IMG/VR virus record: IMGVR_UViG_3300005289_000016
Span: 62,001-126,000 of that record
Reading direction: 5' to 3' (one strand)
Length of the DNA stretch: 64,000 bases
Shown piece after piece: positions 3,662 through 30,588 of the stretch; the first letter of the stretch is position 1, and every line of letters begins with the position of its first letter. Under the pieces are notes generated by a model that had not been told where the DNA came from, made no database searches, and saw only the letters and a list, made by a program, of their open reading frames with translations. Both the position numbers and the translations under genes were made by a program.

Positions 3662-5227
3662 GTGCAGATTCAGCTTAATGAACTGTCGAGTAAGGGAATC
3701 ACATCCCTGACTCTGGATCACCGCGGCAATTCAATGAAGTTGTCAGCAGGCAGCTATCATTCCGCTGCGATCATCAACCGTGAAACACTGTTCAAGGAGA
3801 CCAATGACTTCCTCTCAAGCCTGCCGGCGGAGGATCAAGCCAAGCTTTGGGACTTGTATCTCAAGGTAAACGAGTACCTTTCGTCCGAAGAGATCCGGTC
3901 GTCGTACTTCATCCGCGCTGAAATTGAAGCGGTGGTGAAGCAGATGTACAAGATCATCACTTGGCCGGTGGTACGGGATTGGGTTGAGAAAGCCCGTCTG
4001 GAAATCCCAAGCGACGTCAATGAGAAGTTCGAAGAGTACAACGAGCGCGGTCGTAACTACCGCAGTCGGACGTACATCAAGTCGGACTACATCGACCTGC
4101 AAGCGTTGGCACTGGGGTTGCGGATGATTGTGCCTGTATGGGGCATGTACATCCAGAACGTGGCGTCCACCCACGGCAACGGGTACAAGGAATCGGAAGC
4201 TGTCAAGCTGATCGAGCTGGCTGGTGTGAACCAGTGGCCTCCTTATGTCCGCATGATGGAGTACATCGAGGCATCGGTGGACAAAGAGATCAGCATGACC
4301 ATGGTCATGGCCGGTCTGTCGAGTGAAGAAGTACCACGTCACTTGATGGCTATGGCATTGGTGCGCAAGATCTCCATCGGGCCGTTGTCCACTCCGGTGG
4401 ATCGGGACAGTCTGGCCCGGATTCTGTTCAACTACGTGACTGGCACTCACCTGCGCATGGACGGTCGCTTCCAAAGCGTCACCGGCGTAGTGCAGGCTAA
4501 ACGGTCCCGCAGTCTGGACAAAGGCGACGAAGACAACAGCTCGGTCTGGGACGACTACGGTCAAACCACCGAGATCACCGAAGGCGACCGGCAATTGCTG
4601 GAAGTGTTCAGTGAGAACACCAACGTCATCGTCGTACGTGCTGACCCAACTCTGGACATTGCTCGTGTGCAGCAATGCGTCGCCATCTGTTCTCGTCACG
4701 AAGAGCGCAAGGTGGAAGACTTCCAGAAGGCGATCATCTTCTGGGTTATCCGGACGATCTCGCCAGAAGCACGTGAGCTGCTGCTCAAGCGGACTGAGTT
4801 CCGTTTGATGGGTGTCGCTCAGGCAATCCTGGATCACTGGGGTTTCCACGAGCTGGCCATCCTGGTATCGGCGGAAGAGTACGTCAGCGATGAAGGTGAG
4901 ACCTACATCCCGACTGAAACCCGCAACAAGATCACCAAGCAGCAAGCAGAGGTATTGGACAAACAGTACCCGCACTGGCGCCAGGAAACGAAACGTCAGG
5001 AACCGGGCAAGCGTGGCAACGTAGCCGTGACTGCGATCGACATGGTCGTGGACTGGATGAGTGGCCGTGCTTGGAAACCACACGCACCTCGAGACATCAT
5101 TGAACGTGTGCCGATGCTTAATCAGACCGGCTACATGTACATCTCGGGCGACATCAGACGTCAACTAGCAGACATGATCATTCATGTCAACAACACTATC
5201 GGGAGCCGTACCCATGCAACTAATTGA
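3662..5227 (+). CDS. Non-virion RNA polymerase promoter-specificity (sigma-like) subunit, phiKZ gp68-like
   Basis: 521 aa, GTG start with GAGG RBS; size and position in the gp65-gp75 core block. Confidence 0.7.
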   Translation: MQIQLNELSSKGITSLTLDHRGNSMKLSAGSYHSAAIINRETLFKETNDFLSSLPAEDQAKLWDLYLKVNEYLSSEEIRSSYFIRAEIEAVVKQMYKIITWPVVRDWVEKARLEIPSDVNEKFEEYNERGRNYRSRTYIKSDYIDLQALALGLRMIVPVWGMYIQNVASTHGNGYKESEAVKLIELAGVNQWPPYVRMMEYIEASVDKEISMTMVMAGLSSEEVPRHLMAMALVRKISIGPLSTPVDRDSLARILFNYVTGTHLRMDGRFQSVTGVVQAKRSRSLDKGDEDNSSVWDDYGQTTEITEGDRQLLEVFSENTNVIVVRADPTLDIARVQQCVAICSRHEERKVEDFQKAIIFWVIRTISPEARELLLKRTEFRLMGVAQAILDHWGFHELAILVSAEEYVSDEGETYIPTETRNKITKQQAEVLDKQYPHWRQETKRQEPGKRGNVAVTAIDMVVDWMSGRAWKPHAPRDIIERVPMLNQTGYMYISGDIRRQLADMIIHVNNTIGSRTHATN

Positions 5228-27568: not shown

Positions 27569-27683
27569 GAAACACCGGTGGTGGCACATCGCCGGTACTT
27601 TTAGGGGGTCTGTAGAAGGCCTATTCTAGCCTGCTCCGAGACTAGCGTACCCGTCCGCAACATGGCTCGGCTATGAGACCCCC
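27569..27683 (+). ncRNA. Candidate structured leader or small RNA
   Basis: TATG at 27566; ACCGGTG/CGCCGGT hairpin; GGGGGTCT/AGACCCCC stem enclosing TAGAA/TTCTA and CCGAG/CTCGG stems. Confidence 0.45.
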
Positions 27684-27714
27684 GCCTATTTCAATAACCG
27701 GTAAGGAACTACCG

Positions 27715-28578
27715 ATGCAACTGAATTCTTTCTACACTGGCAGCAAAGTGGTTGGCGCTATCCCAATGTCTCACGACGATTTCTGTCGTTACGTTGGCCG
27801 TGATATCGACCCAGAAGCACTGGACCTCACTGGTTATCTGGTGGAGTACCTGGACGGCGGCAAAGCCAACCACCCGGGCCACGTTGGTTACATCAGCTGG
27901 TCTCCTTCCGAAGTGTTCGAGAAGAACTACATCAGCATCGGTGACATTACCGGCCTAGCGCCGTTCATCATCCGCTTGAAGGCTGAGCGGGCTGAGAACT
28001 ACGACCGCCTCCAGAAGCTGCGTAGCTTCCTGGACATCCAGGACGAGAAGACTCGTGACGAACCTCGTACTGACGAGCGTCAAGCGTTCCTCGACAAGAT
28101 CCCGACCCTGGACATCCAGCATCTGGCCCTGCAACAAGAGCAACTGCGCCTGATGCAAGGTCTGGAAGAAGTTCTGACCCAGCGCTTGGAATTACTGGTA
28201 CCAGAAGCCCGTGTCGAGCACAAAGCCTCGATCCGTTTCTCGGTAGCCAACGGCACTCGCTTCGACATCATGCCACGCGTCTTCAAAGCGCTGGAAGGTC
28301 AGATCGACGCCTGCTGCTACACCGGCACCATCTACAACATCCCGGTCAACTCCATCAAGGTCTTCGGCCAGAATGGCGATCAACTCGATGACGCTACTGT
28401 GCGTGTTGAGAAGATGGTTCGTGGTTTCGGCATCTCTGGCGACATCGGTGAAGAACTGTTGTTCGACATCGGCATGGACGTCCAGCGCGGCATCACTCAC
28501 GTGACCAGCTCGTTCTCGGAAGACTTCCAGATCGAGATCGAAGTACAACTGGCCGACATCAATCGTCGTCTGGTGTAA
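27715..28578 (+). CDS. Phage protein with N-terminal YLVEYLDGGKANHPGHVGYISWSP domain and coiled coil
   Basis: AAGGA RBS before ATG 27715; the N-terminal motif is common in uncharacterised phage proteins. Confidence 0.7.
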   Translation: MQLNSFYTGSKVVGAIPMSHDDFCRYVGRDIDPEALDLTGYLVEYLDGGKANHPGHVGYISWSPSEVFEKNYISIGDITGLAPFIIRLKAERAENYDRLQKLRSFLDIQDEKTRDEPRTDERQAFLDKIPTLDIQHLALQQEQLRLMQGLEEVLTQRLELLVPEARVEHKASIRFSVANGTRFDIMPRVFKALEGQIDACCYTGTIYNIPVNSIKVFGQNGDQLDDATVRVEKMVRGFGISGDIGEELLFDIGMDVQRGITHVTSSFSEDFQIEIEVQLADINRRLV

Positions 28579-28592
28579 CACCCTCCTGCATA

Positions 28593-28615
28593 GCGCCGTG
28601 CTTAGTGCACGGCGT
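28593..28615. terminator. Hairpin flanked by CATA/TATG
   Basis: GCGCCGTGC-TTAGT-GCACGGCGT, then TTATGCCCC. Confidence 0.6.
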
Positions 28616-28685
28616 TTATGCCCCGTCTTTCAACTAAGTCCTTGTATTCGTGTAAAAAAATACACGATGGTTATAGTCTATGTGA

Positions 28686-28737
28686 AGTGCCCTTGTCCCT
28701 TGACTTTCGGTCGTAAGCGGAAAACGTCCTGGGCACT
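28686..28737 (+). ncRNA. Candidate three-way-junction RNA at the start of the non-coding island
   Basis: AGTGCCC/GGGCACT closing stem, GAC-TTTCG-GTC hairpin; TATG at 28679 just upstream. Confidence 0.45.
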
Positions 28738-28745
28738 GAAGCGTT

Positions 28746-28853
28746 TGAGAAAGGGCCTGGCCGCCTGCGGCCGTGATCCGTGCAGCCTTTGAGCAAGCAG
28801 AGGGATCGGCAGCCTTGTGCAGCCACTTGCCGCCGGCGCTGGGCCCTTTCTCA
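28746..28853 (+). ncRNA. Candidate 108-nt structured RNA with a long terminal stem
   Basis: Perfect 12-bp TGAGAAAGGGCC/GGCCCTTTCTCA, internal GGCCG/CGGCC and GATCC/GGATC stems, three GCAGCC copies. Confidence 0.55.
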
Positions 28854-28861
28854 TCCTATCC

Positions 28862-28950
28862 GGAGAGATTTCTGAGCGGTCAAAAGAATCAGACTGTAAA
28901 TCTGACGTGCGTAGCGCACTTCGTAGGTTCGAATCCTTCTCTCTCCACCA
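28862..28950 (+). tRNA. tRNA-Tyr(GUA)
   Basis: GGAGAGA/TCTCTCC acceptor, TCAGA-CTGTAAA-TCTGA anticodon arm, long variable arm, GGTTCGAATCC, encoded ACCA. Confidence 0.95.
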
Positions 28951-28957
28951 TTTCAAT

Positions 28958-29013
28958 GACGGTCGCAGCAATGCGAGGTTGACCCCGCACTGAATCAACA
29001 GTGCCTGTCGCCA
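28958..29013 (+). ncRNA. 56-nt tRNA-like mini RNA ending in GCCA
   Basis: GACGG/CTGTC terminal stem plus GCCA; TCGCA/TGCGA and GCACTG/CAGTGC hairpins; no T-loop consensus. Confidence 0.55.
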
Positions 29014-29015
29014 TA

Positions 29016-29092
29016 GGTTCTATAGCTCAGTTGGTTAGAGCACCGGCCTGTCACGCCGGGGGTCAGGGGTTCAAGTCCCCTTAGAGCCGCCA
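29016..29092 (+). tRNA. tRNA-Asp(GUC)
   Basis: GGTTCTA/TAGAGCC acceptor, CCGGC-CTGTCAC-GCCGG, GGTTCAAGTCC, GCCA. Confidence 0.95.
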
Positions 29093-29097
29093 CATTT

Positions 29098-29176
29098 AGG
29101 GGTGTAGCCAAGTCTGGCCTAAGGCAACAGGTTTTGATCCTGTCATTCTCTGGTTCGAATCCAGATGCCCCTTCCA
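29098..29176 (+). tRNA. tRNA-Gln(UUG)
   Basis: AGGGGTG/TGCCCCT acceptor, ACAGG-TTTTGAT-CCTGT, GGTTCGAATCC, TCCA. Confidence 0.93.
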
Positions 29177-29185
29177 TGTTGTATA

Positions 29186-29287
29186 GTTCACTGCCCATTG
29201 GCCGCATAGTCCCGCAAGCCCCTTCAAGGCGAAGCGAATGGGACTGGCAGCGCAGGGGTTCTGGGTACAGCCCAGCAGTGAACGCCA
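29186..29287 (+). ncRNA. 102-nt tRNA-like RNA with an 8-bp acceptor stem and GCCA end
   Basis: GTTCACTG/CAGTGAAC plus GCCA; CTGGG/CCCAG arm stacked on it; central arm AGTCCC/GGGACT ending in GCC-CCTTCAA-GGC. Confidence 0.6.
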
Positions 29288-29288
29288 T

Positions 29289-29364
29289 TCCGCGATAGCT
29301 CAGTTGGTAGAGCATACGGCTGTTAACCGTAGTGTCCCTGGTTCGAGTCCAGGTCGTGGAGCCA
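29289..29364 (+). tRNA. tRNA-Asn(GUU)
   Basis: TCCGCGA/TCGTGGA acceptor, TACGG-CTGTTAA-CCGTA, GGTTCGAGTCC, GCCA. Confidence 0.95.
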
Positions 29365-29367
29365 TAC

Positions 29368-29550
29368 GCGCTCGAAAGAGCCAAACAGTAAGGTTGGTTA
29401 AATTCCGACACGCTGACCGTGGGCAGTTGCGAAGGGAGTGCGGTTCGATCCCGCATGATAAGTCTCAGAGGCAATAACCTCTGAGTAACTCTGGTGAGAC
29501 AAATGGTCAGGCCGACCCGGCCTTTAAACGCACTGGCGTAATCCAGTCGA
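29368..29550 (+). ncRNA. Candidate multibranch ncRNA containing T-arm modules
   Basis: GCTC-GAAA-GAGC; GTTGG-TTAAATT-CCGAC; TGCGG-TTCGATC-CCGCA; CTCAGAGG/CCTCTGAG; long-range CTGACCGT/ATGGTCAG. Confidence 0.55.
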
Positions 29551-29563
29551 GGGGTGGAGATAT

Positions 29564-29674
29564 AGTCCTGTAGCTCAGTTGGTTAGAGCGCTGCCTTTTC
29601 AGGCCGGACCCTTCGGGGTCGTCGGCCTAACAGACACGGCGGAGGTCGGTAGTTCGAATCTACCTAGGACGACC
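29564..29674 (+). tRNA. Atypical tRNA (Glu-UUC-like) with a 35-nt insertion in the anticodon loop; functional status unknown
   Basis: Intact D arm TAGCTCAGTTGGTTAGAGC, anticodon stem CTGCC/GGCGG, AGGTC, T arm GGTAG-TTCGAAT-CTACC. The 42-nt loop holds a cUUCGg hairpin; 6-bp acceptor pairing; no CCA. Confidence 0.75.
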
Positions 29675-29680
29675 CTTTCA

Positions 29681-29735
29681 ATCAGCGGCATTCATGCGCG
29701 GCGCGCATGGTGTACTCGGACGAGGTCCCGCTGGT
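29681..29735 (+). ncRNA. Candidate small structured RNA
   Basis: ATCAGCGG/CCGCTGGT stem enclosing CATGCGC/GCGCATG and GGAC/GTCC hairpins. Confidence 0.4.
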
Positions 29736-29750
29736 TGGATTCAGTTAGAC

Positions 29751-29902
29751 GATGATATAGCTCAGTGGTAGAGCGGTGAGGGTAAAGACGAGACTCGGGT
29801 TCGATTCCCGGAGGACTGTGCTAGAACACAGGCCTTAGCTCAGTGGTAGAGCGCGGTCGTGCACCTTGCAGGCGTCGGTTTGATTCCGGCTATCGTCGCA
29901 CC
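29751..29902 (+). ncRNA. Twin, strand-swapped tRNA-like RNA with two D arms and two T arms
   Basis: Two identical TAGCTCAGTGGTAGAGCG D arms, two T arms, outer 7-bp GATGATA/TATCGTC acceptor, inner loop-capped AGGACTG/CAGGCCT acceptor. Confidence 0.7.
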
Positions 29903-29904
29903 TA

Positions 29905-30050
29905 CACGTCTCATGGGTGTGCACGCCCAGTGAGCTGACTCTACTCGAGGTCCGTCTGAGTAGATGTCAGAGTGTTACCTGATGGACTGCTGTACGATCT
30001 GGCTCATGCCAGCCGCAGCATGTGACTCGACCGAACAGTGGTCGACAAAG
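29905..30050 (+). ncRNA. Candidate multi-hairpin RNA at the end of the island
   Basis: CTCA-TGGGTG/CGCCCA-G-TGAG; CTGAC-TCTACTC/GAGTAGA-T-GTCAG; CTGGC/GCCAG; TCGACC/GGTCGA. Confidence 0.45.
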
Positions 30051-30141
30051 CCTCTAGCTTGCTCGCTTGTCTTTTAAGGCAGGCGGGCAGTTATGCCGTT
30101 TCACTATCGCTTGGGGAAGCGATCCAACTAGGGAGCGTTAC

Positions 30142-30525
30142 ATGCACTACTATCTGTTTCATCCATCGATCCACGGTGCGTACGATGATAGCCCTGAACT
30201 GCTGAAGTGGTTCATGGGCATCGGGAAGTCGTACAGCCATGCTTTAGAAGTGGGGGCTGCAAAGGTCAAGCAACTAGAGAACCATGAAAGCGACAGCGAC
30301 ATGATGGCGTTGGTCAATGGGTTCACTGTTACCCAGATCGACCAAGTCCATGCCCGCGTCGTCGAGAAGGTCATTGCGTTGTTTGGCCATGATCTACGGA
30401 CAGCAGAACCTAATGCGAAGGCTTCGCTGTCAATGATCACCCTGCTGCTTAACCGTGGCCGGTACGATGTGATCGATCAGATCATCGGCGGTACACCGAT
30501 ATCTGCCACAGAGTTCAGTGCATGA
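30142..30525 (+). CDS. Hypothetical protein
   Basis: GGGAG RBS before ATG 30142; ends at a hairpin. Confidence 0.65.
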   Translation: MHYYLFHPSIHGAYDDSPELLKWFMGIGKSYSHALEVGAAKVKQLENHESDSDMMALVNGFTVTQIDQVHARVVEKVIALFGHDLRTAEPNAKASLSMITLLLNRGRYDVIDQIIGGTPISATEFSA

Positions 30526-30528
30526 CTA

Positions 30529-30544
30529 GGAGGCTTCGGCCTCC
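30529..30544 (+). terminator. Hairpin followed by TATGCCG
   Basis: GGAGGC-TTCG-GCCTCC, TATG at 30548. Confidence 0.6.
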
Positions 30545-30588
30545 GCTTATGCCGCCACCATTATAATTAAACCATTGGGAAATACACC

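What the first reader, a model, noticed from the sequence alone, without database searches (positions are those of the whole stretch)
29186..29287. 102-nt GCCA-ending RNA with an 8+5 acceptor/T-like domain and a UUC-centred 7-nt loop
Seen: an 8-bp terminal stem GTTCACTG/CAGTGAAC, then G and CCA, with a 5-bp CTGGG/CCCAG arm directly abutting it. A long irregular central arm (GCC/GGC, AGTCCC/GGGACT, GC/GC) ends in GCC-CCTTCAA-GGC. It fills the gap between tRNA-Gln and tRNA-Asn almost exactly. Established: an 8+5 acceptor-T domain with G73 is the bacterial tRNA-Sec geometry, and non-canonical allo-tRNAs exist. Here the D arm and T-loop consensus are missing. Inference: a chargeable tRNA-like RNA or an acceptor-end decoy. 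It is the second UUC-bearing oddity in the island.
Basis: partly seen in the sequence, partly recalled or inferred. Interest (0 to 1): 0.72.

Follow-up and report, generated by a model that had tools for sequence, protein, structure and literature searches.

The report
Conserved tRNA-end-like phage small RNA
A small folded RNA gene sits just before the asparagine tRNA gene of a group of giant Pseudomonas-type phages; its ends imitate the acceptor end of a tRNA, but comparison with relatives argues that it neither decodes nor needs to carry an amino acid, so it is a new and still unexplained phage small RNA, not a new tRNA.

Summary
Window 29186-29287 (+) folds into an 8-bp terminal stem, a long arm and a short hairpin that abuts the 3' strand of the terminal stem, followed by GCCA.

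It is a real, conserved RNA. Homologs lie 4-10 nt upstream of tRNA-Asn in four distinct related jumbo-phage sequences, once per genome where whole genomes were searched. They keep the fold: 98.8% of cells paired, 7 pairs with compensatory changes, including two in the terminal stem.

The tRNA reading does not hold.
- ARAGORN and Rfam find nothing, even at E<=10.
- There is no D arm and no T-loop.
- The UUC-centred loop is replaced in one relative, and the whole distal arm is deleted in another (a 60-nt mini form).
- The 3' tail is GCCA, GCCA, ACCA, ACA or AACG..., whereas 21 of 21 Tyr/Asp/Gln/Asn tRNA genes in these islands encode CCA.

The selected core is the terminal stem, the base of the long arm and the short hairpin. 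It is 85-95% identical across relatives, as conserved as the tRNAs.

Best reading: a clade-specific stable small RNA of the phage tRNA operon, probably released by tRNA-processing enzymes through acceptor/T minihelix mimicry, and acting through its invariant core. Its function is unknown. The closest analogue is T4 RNA C.

The parts
29186..29193 (+). P1, 5' strand of the 8-bp terminal (acceptor-like) stem, GUUCACUG
   Evidence: Pairs with 29276-29283. Exactly 8 bp in all five homologs. Pairs 2:97 and 8:91 covary.
29194..29205 (+). P2 base, 5' strand (CCCAUUGGCCGC), part of the conserved core
   Evidence: The first 20 nt of the element are 85-95% identical in all relatives. This strand pairs with 29248-29258.
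29206..29247 (+). Distal part of the long arm P2, including the apical hairpin GCC-CCUUCAA-GGC (29218-29230); dispensable and replaceable
   Evidence: Kept, with compensatory changes, in L005 and L129. Replaced by another sequence with a 4-nt loop in L004. Reduced to a 5-nt loop in L131.
29248..29258 (+). P2 base, 3' strand (CAGCGCAGGGG) with one bulged G, part of the conserved core
29259..29260 (+). Two-nucleotide linker between P2 and P3 (UU; GU or AU in relatives)
29261..29275 (+). P3 hairpin CUGGG-UACAG-CCCAG (T-arm position but no T-loop). The stem is invariant; the loop is UACAG or UAUAG.
   Evidence: Six pairs never vary in the five sequences. The loop C/U difference is seen in L005, L129 and L131.
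29276..29283 (+). P1, 3' strand (CAGUGAAC), directly continuous with P3
29284..29288 (+). 3' tail GCCA plus one U, which is also the whole 5' leader of tRNA-Asn
   Evidence: The tail up to tRNA-Asn is GCCAU (window, L004), ACCAU (L129), ACAU (L005) and AACGCUUUAC (L131).
29289..29364 (+). tRNA-Asn(GUU), the invariable downstream neighbour
   Evidence: ARAGORN and Rfam. It follows the element in every lineage seen.
28746..28853 (+). Leader element of the same tRNA operon, with the same topology (terminal stem, long arm, short hairpin); a possible distant paralogue
   Evidence: Folds. Conserved in 8 loci. Shares 11-17-nt strings of the arm apex with the element. Covariance models do not link the two significantly.

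Best explanation
The element is the gene of a small structured RNA about 98-102 nt long (60 nt in its minimal form). It is specific to one clade of jumbo phages related to Pseudomonas phage pPa_SNUABM_DT01.

Shown:
- It lies on the same strand as the phage tRNAs, inside a tRNA island with no sigma-70-type promoter or intrinsic terminator on that strand.
- It folds as a three-way junction.
- The fold, and a 56-nt core (P1, P2 base, P3), are under purifying selection as strong as that on the tRNAs.

Inferred:
- The island is a single transcription unit, so the element is made as part of the polycistronic tRNA precursor.
- P1 stacked on P3 gives 13-14 bp, with a purine plus CCA tail in most lineages. 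This imitates the acceptor/T branch of a tRNA well enough for the host tRNA-processing machinery to excise it.
- RNase P cleavage at the start of tRNA-Asn, 4-10 nt downstream, would free its 3' side. RNase P or RNase E, cutting in the A/U-rich upstream linker, would free its 5' side. 3' exonucleases would trim back to the CCA or to the stem.
- The released RNA works in trans through the invariant P2-base/P3 surface, most likely as a binding site for a host or phage protein.
- It is not a decoding tRNA, and aminoacylation is not an essential property.

Its biological role is not known.
For: - Anatomy and stability.
- Homologs: L004/L003 and L005, L129 and the 60-nt L131 form. One copy per genome in the four whole phage records searched.
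- Close variants in four public runs, two of them RNA libraries. These include C29196T, which keeps a U.G pair only on the + strand.
- Covariation: 98.8% of cells paired, 7 doubly changed pairs, 0/500 shuffles, slid controls 31-43%.
- Core identity of 85-95% matches that of the neighbouring tRNAs. In the most distant relative the core is 89% identical, against 82% for tRNA-Asn and 79% for tRNA-Tyr.
- The distal arm is replaceable or deletable.
- No promoter-like or terminator-like site on the + strand within 28400-30300.
- Precedent for unexplained stable RNAs in a phage tRNA cluster: T4 RNAC and RNAD (PMC3014915, PMC9697503). T4 rnaC folds with an acceptor-like stem abutting a T arm plus long arms.
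Against: - No direct evidence for a processed 29186-29287 species. The RNA-library contigs span the neighbouring tRNAs, so they show at most a precursor, or DNA.
- P3 has a 3-5-nt loop instead of a T-loop, so recognition by RNase P or the CCA-adding enzyme is only an inference.
- CCA is absent in two lineages.
- The constant position right before tRNA-Asn also fits a purely cis-acting role.
- No partner protein was identified. The phage has no Ro (TROVE), CCA-adding or RtcB gene.
- Free energy alone does not favour the + strand in the window: -45.2 kcal/mol on both strands.
Confidence: 0.5

Rival explanations
1. A cis-acting leader structure for tRNA-Asn. The junction is not a product in its own right. 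It is a folded 5' leader that guides or insulates folding and 5' processing of the tRNA-Asn precursor, or protects the processed upstream fragment. It is degraded after cleavage.
For: - The element is always 4-10 nt upstream of tRNA-Asn, while its upstream neighbour changes: tRNA-Gln, a 120-nt hairpin module, or tRNA-Asp.
- In the more distant phages DT01 and L133, another junction of the same topology (the leader element) sits right before tRNA-Asn.
Against: - The other tRNAs of the island, and the tRNA-Asn genes of other jumbo phages, do without it.
- A spacer would not need an invariant hairpin stem and loop and an invariant P2 base, 89% identical where tRNA-Asn itself is 82% identical.
- The distance to the tRNA is not fixed.
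Confidence: 0.25
2. An acceptor-end decoy, a special case of the trans-acting reading. The minihelix with an RCCA end soaks up a host enzyme that attacks or modifies tRNA 3' ends or acceptor stems during phage defence.
For: - Acceptor-like 8-bp stem with G or A plus CCA in the window, L004/L003 and L129, and in the run variants X17, X18 and X23.
- The island's tRNAs all read NAN codons (Tyr, Asp, Asn, Gln, His, a Glu-like one). From general knowledge, this is the set typically hit by anticodon nucleases, which suggests a counter-defence island.
Against: - CCA is lost in L005 (ACA) and L131 (AACG...), although the rest of the core is kept.
- The invariant parts are P3 and the P2 base, not the tail.
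- No defence target is known.
Confidence: 0.1
3. One reading: a chargeable non-canonical tRNA (tRNA-Sec-like 8+5 or allo-tRNA-like) that decodes through the UUC-centred loop.
For: - 8-bp stem plus 5-bp arm with G73 and CCA in the window.
- A 7-nt apical loop CCUUCAA, kept in L005 and L129.
Against: - ARAGORN finds nothing, and Rfam has no hit at all, even at E<=10 on the 111-nt stretch.
- No D arm and no T-loop.
- Loop position 33 is C, not U.
- The loop is absent in L004 and the arm is deleted in L131, while the core is kept.
- CCA is not conserved, against 21/21 in true tRNAs.
Confidence: 0.04
4. A decaying tRNA pseudogene or other non-functional relic that merely still folds.
For: Its position inside a tRNA array and its acceptor-like ends. 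The island also contains other degenerate-looking tRNA-like pieces.
Against: - Compensatory changes in P1 and P2.
- A core as conserved as the functional tRNAs across phages whose neighbouring protein is only 66-86% identical.
- The deletion in L131 removes the distal arm cleanly and re-closes the helix.
Confidence: 0.04

Closest known systems
Bacteriophage T4 RNA C (species 1 RNA, rnaC) and RNA D, the small stable RNAs of the T4 tRNA gene cluster
   Same: - Encoded among phage tRNA genes on the same strand.
- Not a decoding tRNA, and function unknown (PMC3014915, PMC9697503).
- T4 rnaC folds with its 5' and 3' ends paired next to a hairpin in the T-arm position, and with long arms in place of the D and anticodon arms.
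   Different: - No sequence or covariance-model similarity: R2 gives 4.6 bits, E about 5.
- T4 rnaC has a true T-loop (GGUUCGAAUCC); this element has a 3-5-nt loop.
- T4 rnaC has two long arms and 139 nt; this element has one arm and 60-102 nt.
Bacterial tRNA-Sec (8+5 acceptor/T branch, G73)
   Same: A 13-bp acceptor/T-type stack made of 8 + 5 bp, with G before CCA in the window.
   Different: - No UCA anticodon, no 6-bp D stem, no long variable arm, no T-loop.
- No Rfam match of any family to the element.
- The loop and the CCA are not conserved.
Allo-tRNAs (8/4 and 9/3 tRNAs, PMC5389517)
   Same: A longer-than-normal acceptor stem, found in a phage or metagenomic setting.
   Different: From the abstract of PMC5389517 and general knowledge, allo-tRNAs are novel cloverleaf tRNAs with a 12-bp acceptor/T branch. 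Here the D arm is absent and the putative anticodon arm is dispensable.
tRNA-like domain of tmRNA, and other non-tRNA RNase P substrates with an acceptor-like stem and RCCA tail (for example the C4 RNA of phages P1/P7; from memory, not checked here)
   Same: Paired 5' and 3' ends followed by purine-CCA, with a hairpin stacked on the terminal stem. Maturation is expected to borrow tRNA enzymes.
   Different: - No G3.U70, no T-loop, no tag reading frame.
- ARAGORN and Rfam tmRNA models are silent.
- CCA is not universally kept.
Bacterial and phage Y RNA-like RNAs (YrlA)
   Same: A tRNA-mimicking non-coding RNA. A weak YrlA-like hit and tRNA-like pieces lie elsewhere in the same island.
   Different: - From general knowledge, in Y RNAs the tRNA-like part is apical and the paired ends bind Ro. 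Here the paired ends are themselves the acceptor-like part.
- The phage has no Ro/TROVE gene.
- No Rfam hit on the element.

Membership tests
Canonical tRNA (Rfam RF00005, ARAGORN) | Cloverleaf with a D arm, recognised by tRNA models | tested here: not met
   ARAGORN calls the four neighbouring tRNAs but not this element. Rfam gives no hit at E<=10 on 2.6 kb or on the 111-nt stretch alone. The folds show a three-way junction with no D arm.
Canonical tRNA (Rfam RF00005, ARAGORN) | 7-nt T-loop of the UUCRANY type on a 5-bp stem | tested here: not met
   P3 is CUGGG-UACAG-CCCAG, with a loop of 5 nt, or 3 nt if U.G closes it.
Canonical tRNA (Rfam RF00005, ARAGORN) | Conserved 7-nt anticodon loop with U33 | tested here: not met
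   The loop CCUUCAA has C at position 33. It is replaced by a 4-nt loop in L004, and the distal arm is deleted in L131.
Canonical tRNA (Rfam RF00005, ARAGORN) | Encoded 3' CCA, as in all tRNA genes of these phages | tested here: not met
   21 of 21 Tyr/Asp/Gln/Asn genes in seven islands end in CCA. The element has GCCA, GCCA, ACCA, ACA and AACG.
Bacterial tRNA-Sec | 8-bp acceptor stem plus 5-bp T stem | tested here: met
   P1 is exactly 8 bp in all five homologs. P3 is 5 bp plus an optional U.G.
Bacterial tRNA-Sec | UCA anticodon, extended D stem, long variable arm | tested here: not met
   None is present in the folds. Rfam, whose library includes tRNA and tRNA-Sec models, gave no match of any family to the element.
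Allo-tRNA (8/4, 9/3) | 12-bp acceptor/T branch within a full cloverleaf that has an anticodon arm | tested here: not met
   The branch here is 13-14 bp, there is no D arm, and the long arm is dispensable. Family definition taken from the abstract of PMC5389517 and general knowledge.
tmRNA tRNA-like domain | Acceptor stem with G3.U70, T arm with T-loop, tag peptide frame | tested here: not met
   Pair 3:96 is U:A and there is no T-loop. ARAGORN finds no tmRNA, and Rfam has no hit.
T4 RNA C-type stable RNA of a phage tRNA cluster | Located among phage tRNA genes, with an acceptor-like terminal stem abutting a hairpin | tested here: met
T4 RNA C-type stable RNA of a phage tRNA cluster | Sequence or structure homology to T4 rnaC or rnaD | tested here: not met
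   Model R2 on the T4 tRNA region gives a best score of 4.6 bits, E about 5.
T4 RNA C-type stable RNA of a phage tRNA cluster | Accumulates as a discrete processed RNA during infection | not testable with these tools
   Only assembled contigs from RNA libraries were available. They bridge the neighbouring tRNAs.
RNase P minihelix-type substrate | Coaxial acceptor/T-type helix of about 12-13 bp, G at +1, 3' RCCA | tested here: inconclusive
   The helix (8 + 5-6 bp) and G1:C pair are present in all five homologs. RCCA is present in 3 of 5. No T-loop.
RNase P minihelix-type substrate | Cleaved by RNase P at the 5' end of P1 | not testable with these tools
   Needs an in vitro cleavage assay or 5'-end mapping.
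Y RNA / YrlA | Ro (TROVE) partner gene and a match to the YrlA model | tested here: not met
   No TROVE domain in the 276-kb genome. No Rfam hit over the element.
Leader element of the same operon (window 28746-28853 and homologs) | Significant covariance-model match in either direction | tested here: not met
   R2 against leader elements: best E = 0.07 (L133), others 0.4-2. R3, the leader model, against the elements: only L129 at 9.5 bits, E = 2.9. The two share topology and 11-17-nt strings.

The most novel reading that the evidence does not exclude
The element, perhaps together with the similarly shaped leader element, is a trans-acting tRNA mimic used as a counter-defence. It would titrate or misdirect a host enzyme that attacks tRNAs, through either of two surfaces.
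- Its acceptor-like end.
- Its invariant P3 loop, UACAG or UAUAG. This loop is complementary to the C32-U33-G34-U35 stretch present in the anticodon loops of the island's own Tyr, Asn and Asp tRNAs, a stretch expected, from general knowledge, in GUN-anticodon tRNAs such as tRNA-His as well.

That would make it an RNA-based anti-defence factor embedded in a tRNA 'repair kit' island.
Probability: 0.12. Interest if true: 0.8.

Novelty: new variant of a known kind. Interest (0 to 1): 0.45.

Why it matters
Phage tRNA clusters are now seen as tools against host tRNA-cleaving defences. The non-tRNA RNAs inside them, such as T4 RNA C and D known since the 1970s, are still unexplained.

This element is a compact example of that kind, 60 nt in its minimal form.
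- Its core is clearly defined and strongly conserved.
- Its structure is supported by covariation.
- A natural deletion series shows which parts matter.

That makes the question testable: which protein binds the P2-base/P3 surface, and does the RNA depend on tRNA-processing enzymes?

It also warns against annotating acceptor-like, CCA-ending hairpins in phage tRNA islands as novel tRNAs.

Tried and rejected
- BLAST of the element against 50,697 phage records gave only one 24-nt chance match.
- The exact 14-mer scan CACTGCCCATTGGC in IMG/VR gave more than 119 chance hits and was useless.
- Three other pattern scans of IMG/VR returned only the same three contigs.
- The conserved 23-nt core pattern is absent from 185,579 bacterial and archaeal genomes, so it is not a host or prophage element.
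- Model R2, with filters off, found nothing in the tRNA islands of Pseudomonas phages Noxifer, D6, RVTF4 and DT01, Erwinia phage ChrisDB, or T4.
- Paralogy with the operon's leader element was considered, because of the shared topology and shared strings. Neither covariance model links them significantly, so it is kept only as a possibility.
- Self-cleaving ribozymes (hammerhead, HDV-like, twister and others), riboswitches, T-box, SRP RNA and 6S RNA were considered. There is no Rfam match, and the junction has almost no unpaired nucleotides.
- A coding reading was rejected. ORFs 29134-29298 and 29238-29477 overlap tRNA genes, and the homologs differ by arm replacement and a 38-nt deletion.
- No phage-encoded partner was found among Ro/TROVE, CCA-adding enzyme and RtcB.
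- Five literature searches found no description of this RNA.
- Free energy does not distinguish the strands in the window. The strand assignment rests on the tRNA context and on G.U pairs.

Full report
**Where it lies**

The window is bases 62001-126000 of a 276-kb IMG/VR virus record rated complete. Its nearest cultured relative is Pseudomonas aeruginosa jumbo phage pPa_SNUABM_DT01. A baseplate-hub protein is 72% identical at the amino-acid level, and the gene just upstream of the island is 31% identical.

Between about 28580 and 30140 lies a non-coding island on the + strand.
- ARAGORN and Rfam find tRNA-Tyr (28862-28950), tRNA-Asp (29016-29092), tRNA-Gln (29098-29176) and tRNA-Asn (29289-29364).
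- Rfam alone finds a tRNA-like gene with a 37-nt insert in its anticodon loop (29564-29672) and two partial tRNA-like pieces.
- The simple scans find no sigma-70-type promoter or intrinsic terminator on the + strand inside the island.

The island is therefore most simply one transcription unit.

**The observation**

The minimum-free-energy fold of 29186-29287 is a three-way junction with four parts.
- P1: 8 bp formed by the two ends.
- P2: a long irregular arm that starts directly after P1 and ends in GCC-CCUUCAA-GGC.
- A 2-nt linker.
- P3: the hairpin CUGGG-UACAG-CCCAG, which runs without a break into the 3' strand of P1. GCCA follows.

The z-score against shuffles is modest in the window (-2.6) and stronger in the homologs (-3.4, -4.4, -5.2).

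**Homologs**

The element has no match in GenBank phages. Its conserved 23-nt core pattern is absent from 185,579 prokaryotic genomes.

Using the neighbouring protein as a handle, I found related islands in IMG/VR (L003/L004, L005) and in metagenome contigs (L129, L131). In each, a homolog of the element lies immediately upstream of tRNA-Asn.

A covariance model finds one copy in each of the four whole phage records searched and none in DT01. It also finds none in the tRNA islands of Noxifer, D6, RVTF4, ChrisDB or T4.

Contigs from four public runs add near-identical variants.
- The runs are an invertebrate metagenome, a faecal metagenome and two RNA libraries of coded organisms.
- In the RNA-library phage, tRNA-Asp rather than tRNA-Gln precedes the element.
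- tRNA-Asn still follows it.

**What is conserved**

On the five distinct sequences, 98.8% of pair cells are standard pairs, against 31-43% when the 3' partners are slid. Seven pairs have changes on both sides, and no shuffle of 500 reaches that.
- P1 is exactly 8 bp in all five and covaries at two positions: U:A to C:G at 2:97, and G:C to A:U at 8:91.
- The P2 stem covaries at several positions.
- P3 never varies in its stem. Its loop is UACAG or UAUAG.

The first 20 nt and the last 36 nt of the element are 85-95% identical across all relatives. In the most distant relative (L131) this core is 89% identical, against 82% for tRNA-Asn, 79% for tRNA-Tyr and 69% for the operon leader.

Several pairs are G.U. 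One run variant, C29196T, turns a C:G pair into U.G. On the opposite strand that would be an A.C mismatch, so the + strand is the likely functional RNA strand. Free energy alone does not separate the strands in the window.

**What is not conserved**

The distal part of P2 is not required.
- L004 carries a different sequence there, ending in a 4-nt loop.
- L131 has lost the distal arm altogether. P2 is closed by a 5-nt loop just above its conserved base, which gives a 60-nt element.

The 3' tail varies as well. Up to the first base of tRNA-Asn it reads as follows.

| Sequence | Tail up to tRNA-Asn |
|---|---|
| Window | GCCAU |
| L004 | GCCAU |
| L129 | ACCAU |
| L005 | ACAU |
| L131 | AACGCUUUAC |

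In the same seven islands, all 21 Tyr, Asp, Gln and Asn genes encode CCA. In these phages, encoded CCA is therefore a reliable mark of a working tRNA, and the element does not carry it reliably.

**Not a tRNA**

ARAGORN does not call it. Rfam gives no hit for any of its 4227 families, even at E<=10 on the 111-nt stretch alone. Rfam's library includes tRNA, tRNA-Sec and tmRNA models.

There is no D arm, no T-loop, and no U33 in the apical loop.

The 8+5 geometry is real, but it is the only tRNA-Sec feature present.

**Best explanation**

It is a stable small RNA of the phage tRNA operon that borrows tRNA-processing enzymes.

The P1/P3 stack (13-14 bp, G1:C pair, purine-CCA tail in most lineages) is what a tRNA 'top half' looks like. 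RNase P must cut 4-10 nt downstream to make tRNA-Asn, which frees the element's 3' side. The upstream linkers are short and A/U-rich.

The parts under the strictest selection are the P3 stem and the P2 base with its unpaired A and bulged G. These are not needed for mere helix formation, so I infer a specific binding surface for a protein or another RNA.

None of these steps is shown. The RNA-library contigs bridge the neighbouring tRNAs, so they prove neither processing nor, strictly, transcription. I put 0.5 on this model.

The rivals and their weights are:
- a purely cis-acting leader for tRNA-Asn, 0.25;
- an acceptor-end decoy, 0.1;
- a chargeable or decoding tRNA, about 0.04;
- a relic, about 0.04.

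**Relation to the operon leader**

The first structure of the operon (28746-28853, just before tRNA-Tyr) has the same topology: terminal stem, long arm, short hairpin. It is conserved in eight loci. These include DT01 and L133, where it sits directly before tRNA-Asn.

Its arm apex shares 11-17-nt strings with the element's distal arm: AAGCGAAUGGG in L131 and CCCUUCAAGGC in L133.

Covariance models built from either family do not detect the other significantly. The best results are E = 0.07 and E = 2.9. A common origin, or an exchange of the arm module, is therefore possible but unproven.

**Closest known**

By context and design the closest known case is T4 RNA C (species 1 RNA). It is encoded in the T4 tRNA cluster and its role is still unknown (PMC3014915, PMC9697503). 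In the T4 record it folds with paired ends next to a T arm and with long arms elsewhere.

There is no detectable homology. T4 RNA C also has a genuine T-loop, which this element lacks.

The phage encodes no Ro, CCA-adding enzyme or RtcB that might point to a partner.

**Speculative lead**

The P3 loop UACAG/UAUAG is complementary to the CUGU (C32-U33-G34-U35) stretch present in the anticodon loops of the island's own Tyr, Asn and Asp tRNAs. The C/U difference would keep a G.U pair with G34.

With one substitution and a 4-nt match, this is well within chance. I record it only as something a binding test could address.

**Verdict**

The tRNA-Sec-like or chargeable reading is not supported.

This is a new family of a known but poorly understood kind: non-tRNA small RNAs embedded in phage tRNA clusters. 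Its interest is moderate. It is not surprising in kind, but it is unusually well delimited for experiments.

Noticed in passing
window 29564-29672 (also L129:5306-5417, L004:5888-6002, L005:5952-6063, L131:5021-5129): A tRNA-like gene (Rfam tRNA, 47-52 bits) with a 37-43-nt hairpin inserted in the anticodon loop after UUUUCA. The hairpin sequence differs between relatives but stays a hairpin. The gene ends in ACCC rather than ACCA and has an A1/G72 mismatch. ARAGORN does not call it. The insert is far too short for a group I intron.
   Followed up: partly
window 28746-28853 (homologs L129:4563-4673, L004:5050-5154, L005:5046-5149, L131:4519-4626, L002:5362-5470, L133:5295-5405, L134:~4560-4670): A conserved, strongly folding leader RNA (z -3.8 to -7.4). 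It consists of a long terminal stem, an arm with a U-rich apical loop and a short hairpin, followed by ACC(C/U) in six of the eight loci (AUCC in the window and L129). It lies before the first tRNA of the island, and directly before tRNA-Asn in phage DT01 and in L133. No Rfam match.
   Followed up: partly
window 29758-29811 and 29836-29890; L133:5845-5990: Two adjacent tRNA-like pieces with a normal D arm and T arm but no normal anticodon arm. Rfam tRNA gives 24 and 22 bits, below threshold, and there is a weak YrlA-like hit at 29792-29852. A similar pair exists in the distant relative L133. The genome has no Ro/TROVE gene.
   Followed up: partly
window 29365-29563; L005:5327-5560: Lineage-specific inserts of about 195-230 nt between tRNAs, each containing a perfect T-arm-like GCGG(G)UUCGA(U/G)(U/C)CCCGC. 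The L005 insert is closed by a 10-bp terminal stem. These may be further tRNA-like stable RNAs of the T4 RNA C type.
   Followed up: no
L129:4997-5118, L004:5581-5702, L005:5645-5766 (absent from the window between 29177 and 29185): A ~120-nt hairpin module with a 13-bp terminal stem (ACAUCUUCAAGUA / UACUUGAAGAUGU). It sits between tRNA-Gln and the element in three relatives and is cleanly missing from the window and L131. The island looks like a mosaic of exchangeable RNA modules.
   Followed up: no
window 28588-28626, 30060-30100, 30530-30560: A G+C-rich hairpin followed by (G/T)TTATGCC(G) recurs after the upstream gene, at the end of the tRNA island and after the next gene. It is conserved in the relatives. 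It is probably a phage-specific terminator or intergenic signal that the sigma-70 and intrinsic-terminator scans do not see.
   Followed up: no
window 27673-28578 (+): The 301-aa protein encoded just upstream of the island has an N-terminal region matching DUF2829 proteins. Some phage records label these as anti-CRISPR proteins. From general knowledge, this family includes Tad2-type anti-defence proteins. It is syntenic with the tRNA island in all relatives, including DT01.
   Followed up: no
window 29905-30035: A non-coding block (ctcatggg...gatggactgctgtacgatctgg...gtgactcg) is conserved in every relative, including DT01 and L133. It lies between the last tRNA-like gene and the terminal hairpin of the island. 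No Rfam match.
   Followed up: no
Read-laying runs X17, X18 and about 15 further runs of coded organisms B-F: A phage carrying a near-identical element (2 differences in 102 nt) turns up in many RNA and DNA runs of one coded organism, from at least ten studies. This suggests a laboratory-associated host or carrier culture in which the RNA could be studied.
   Followed up: partly
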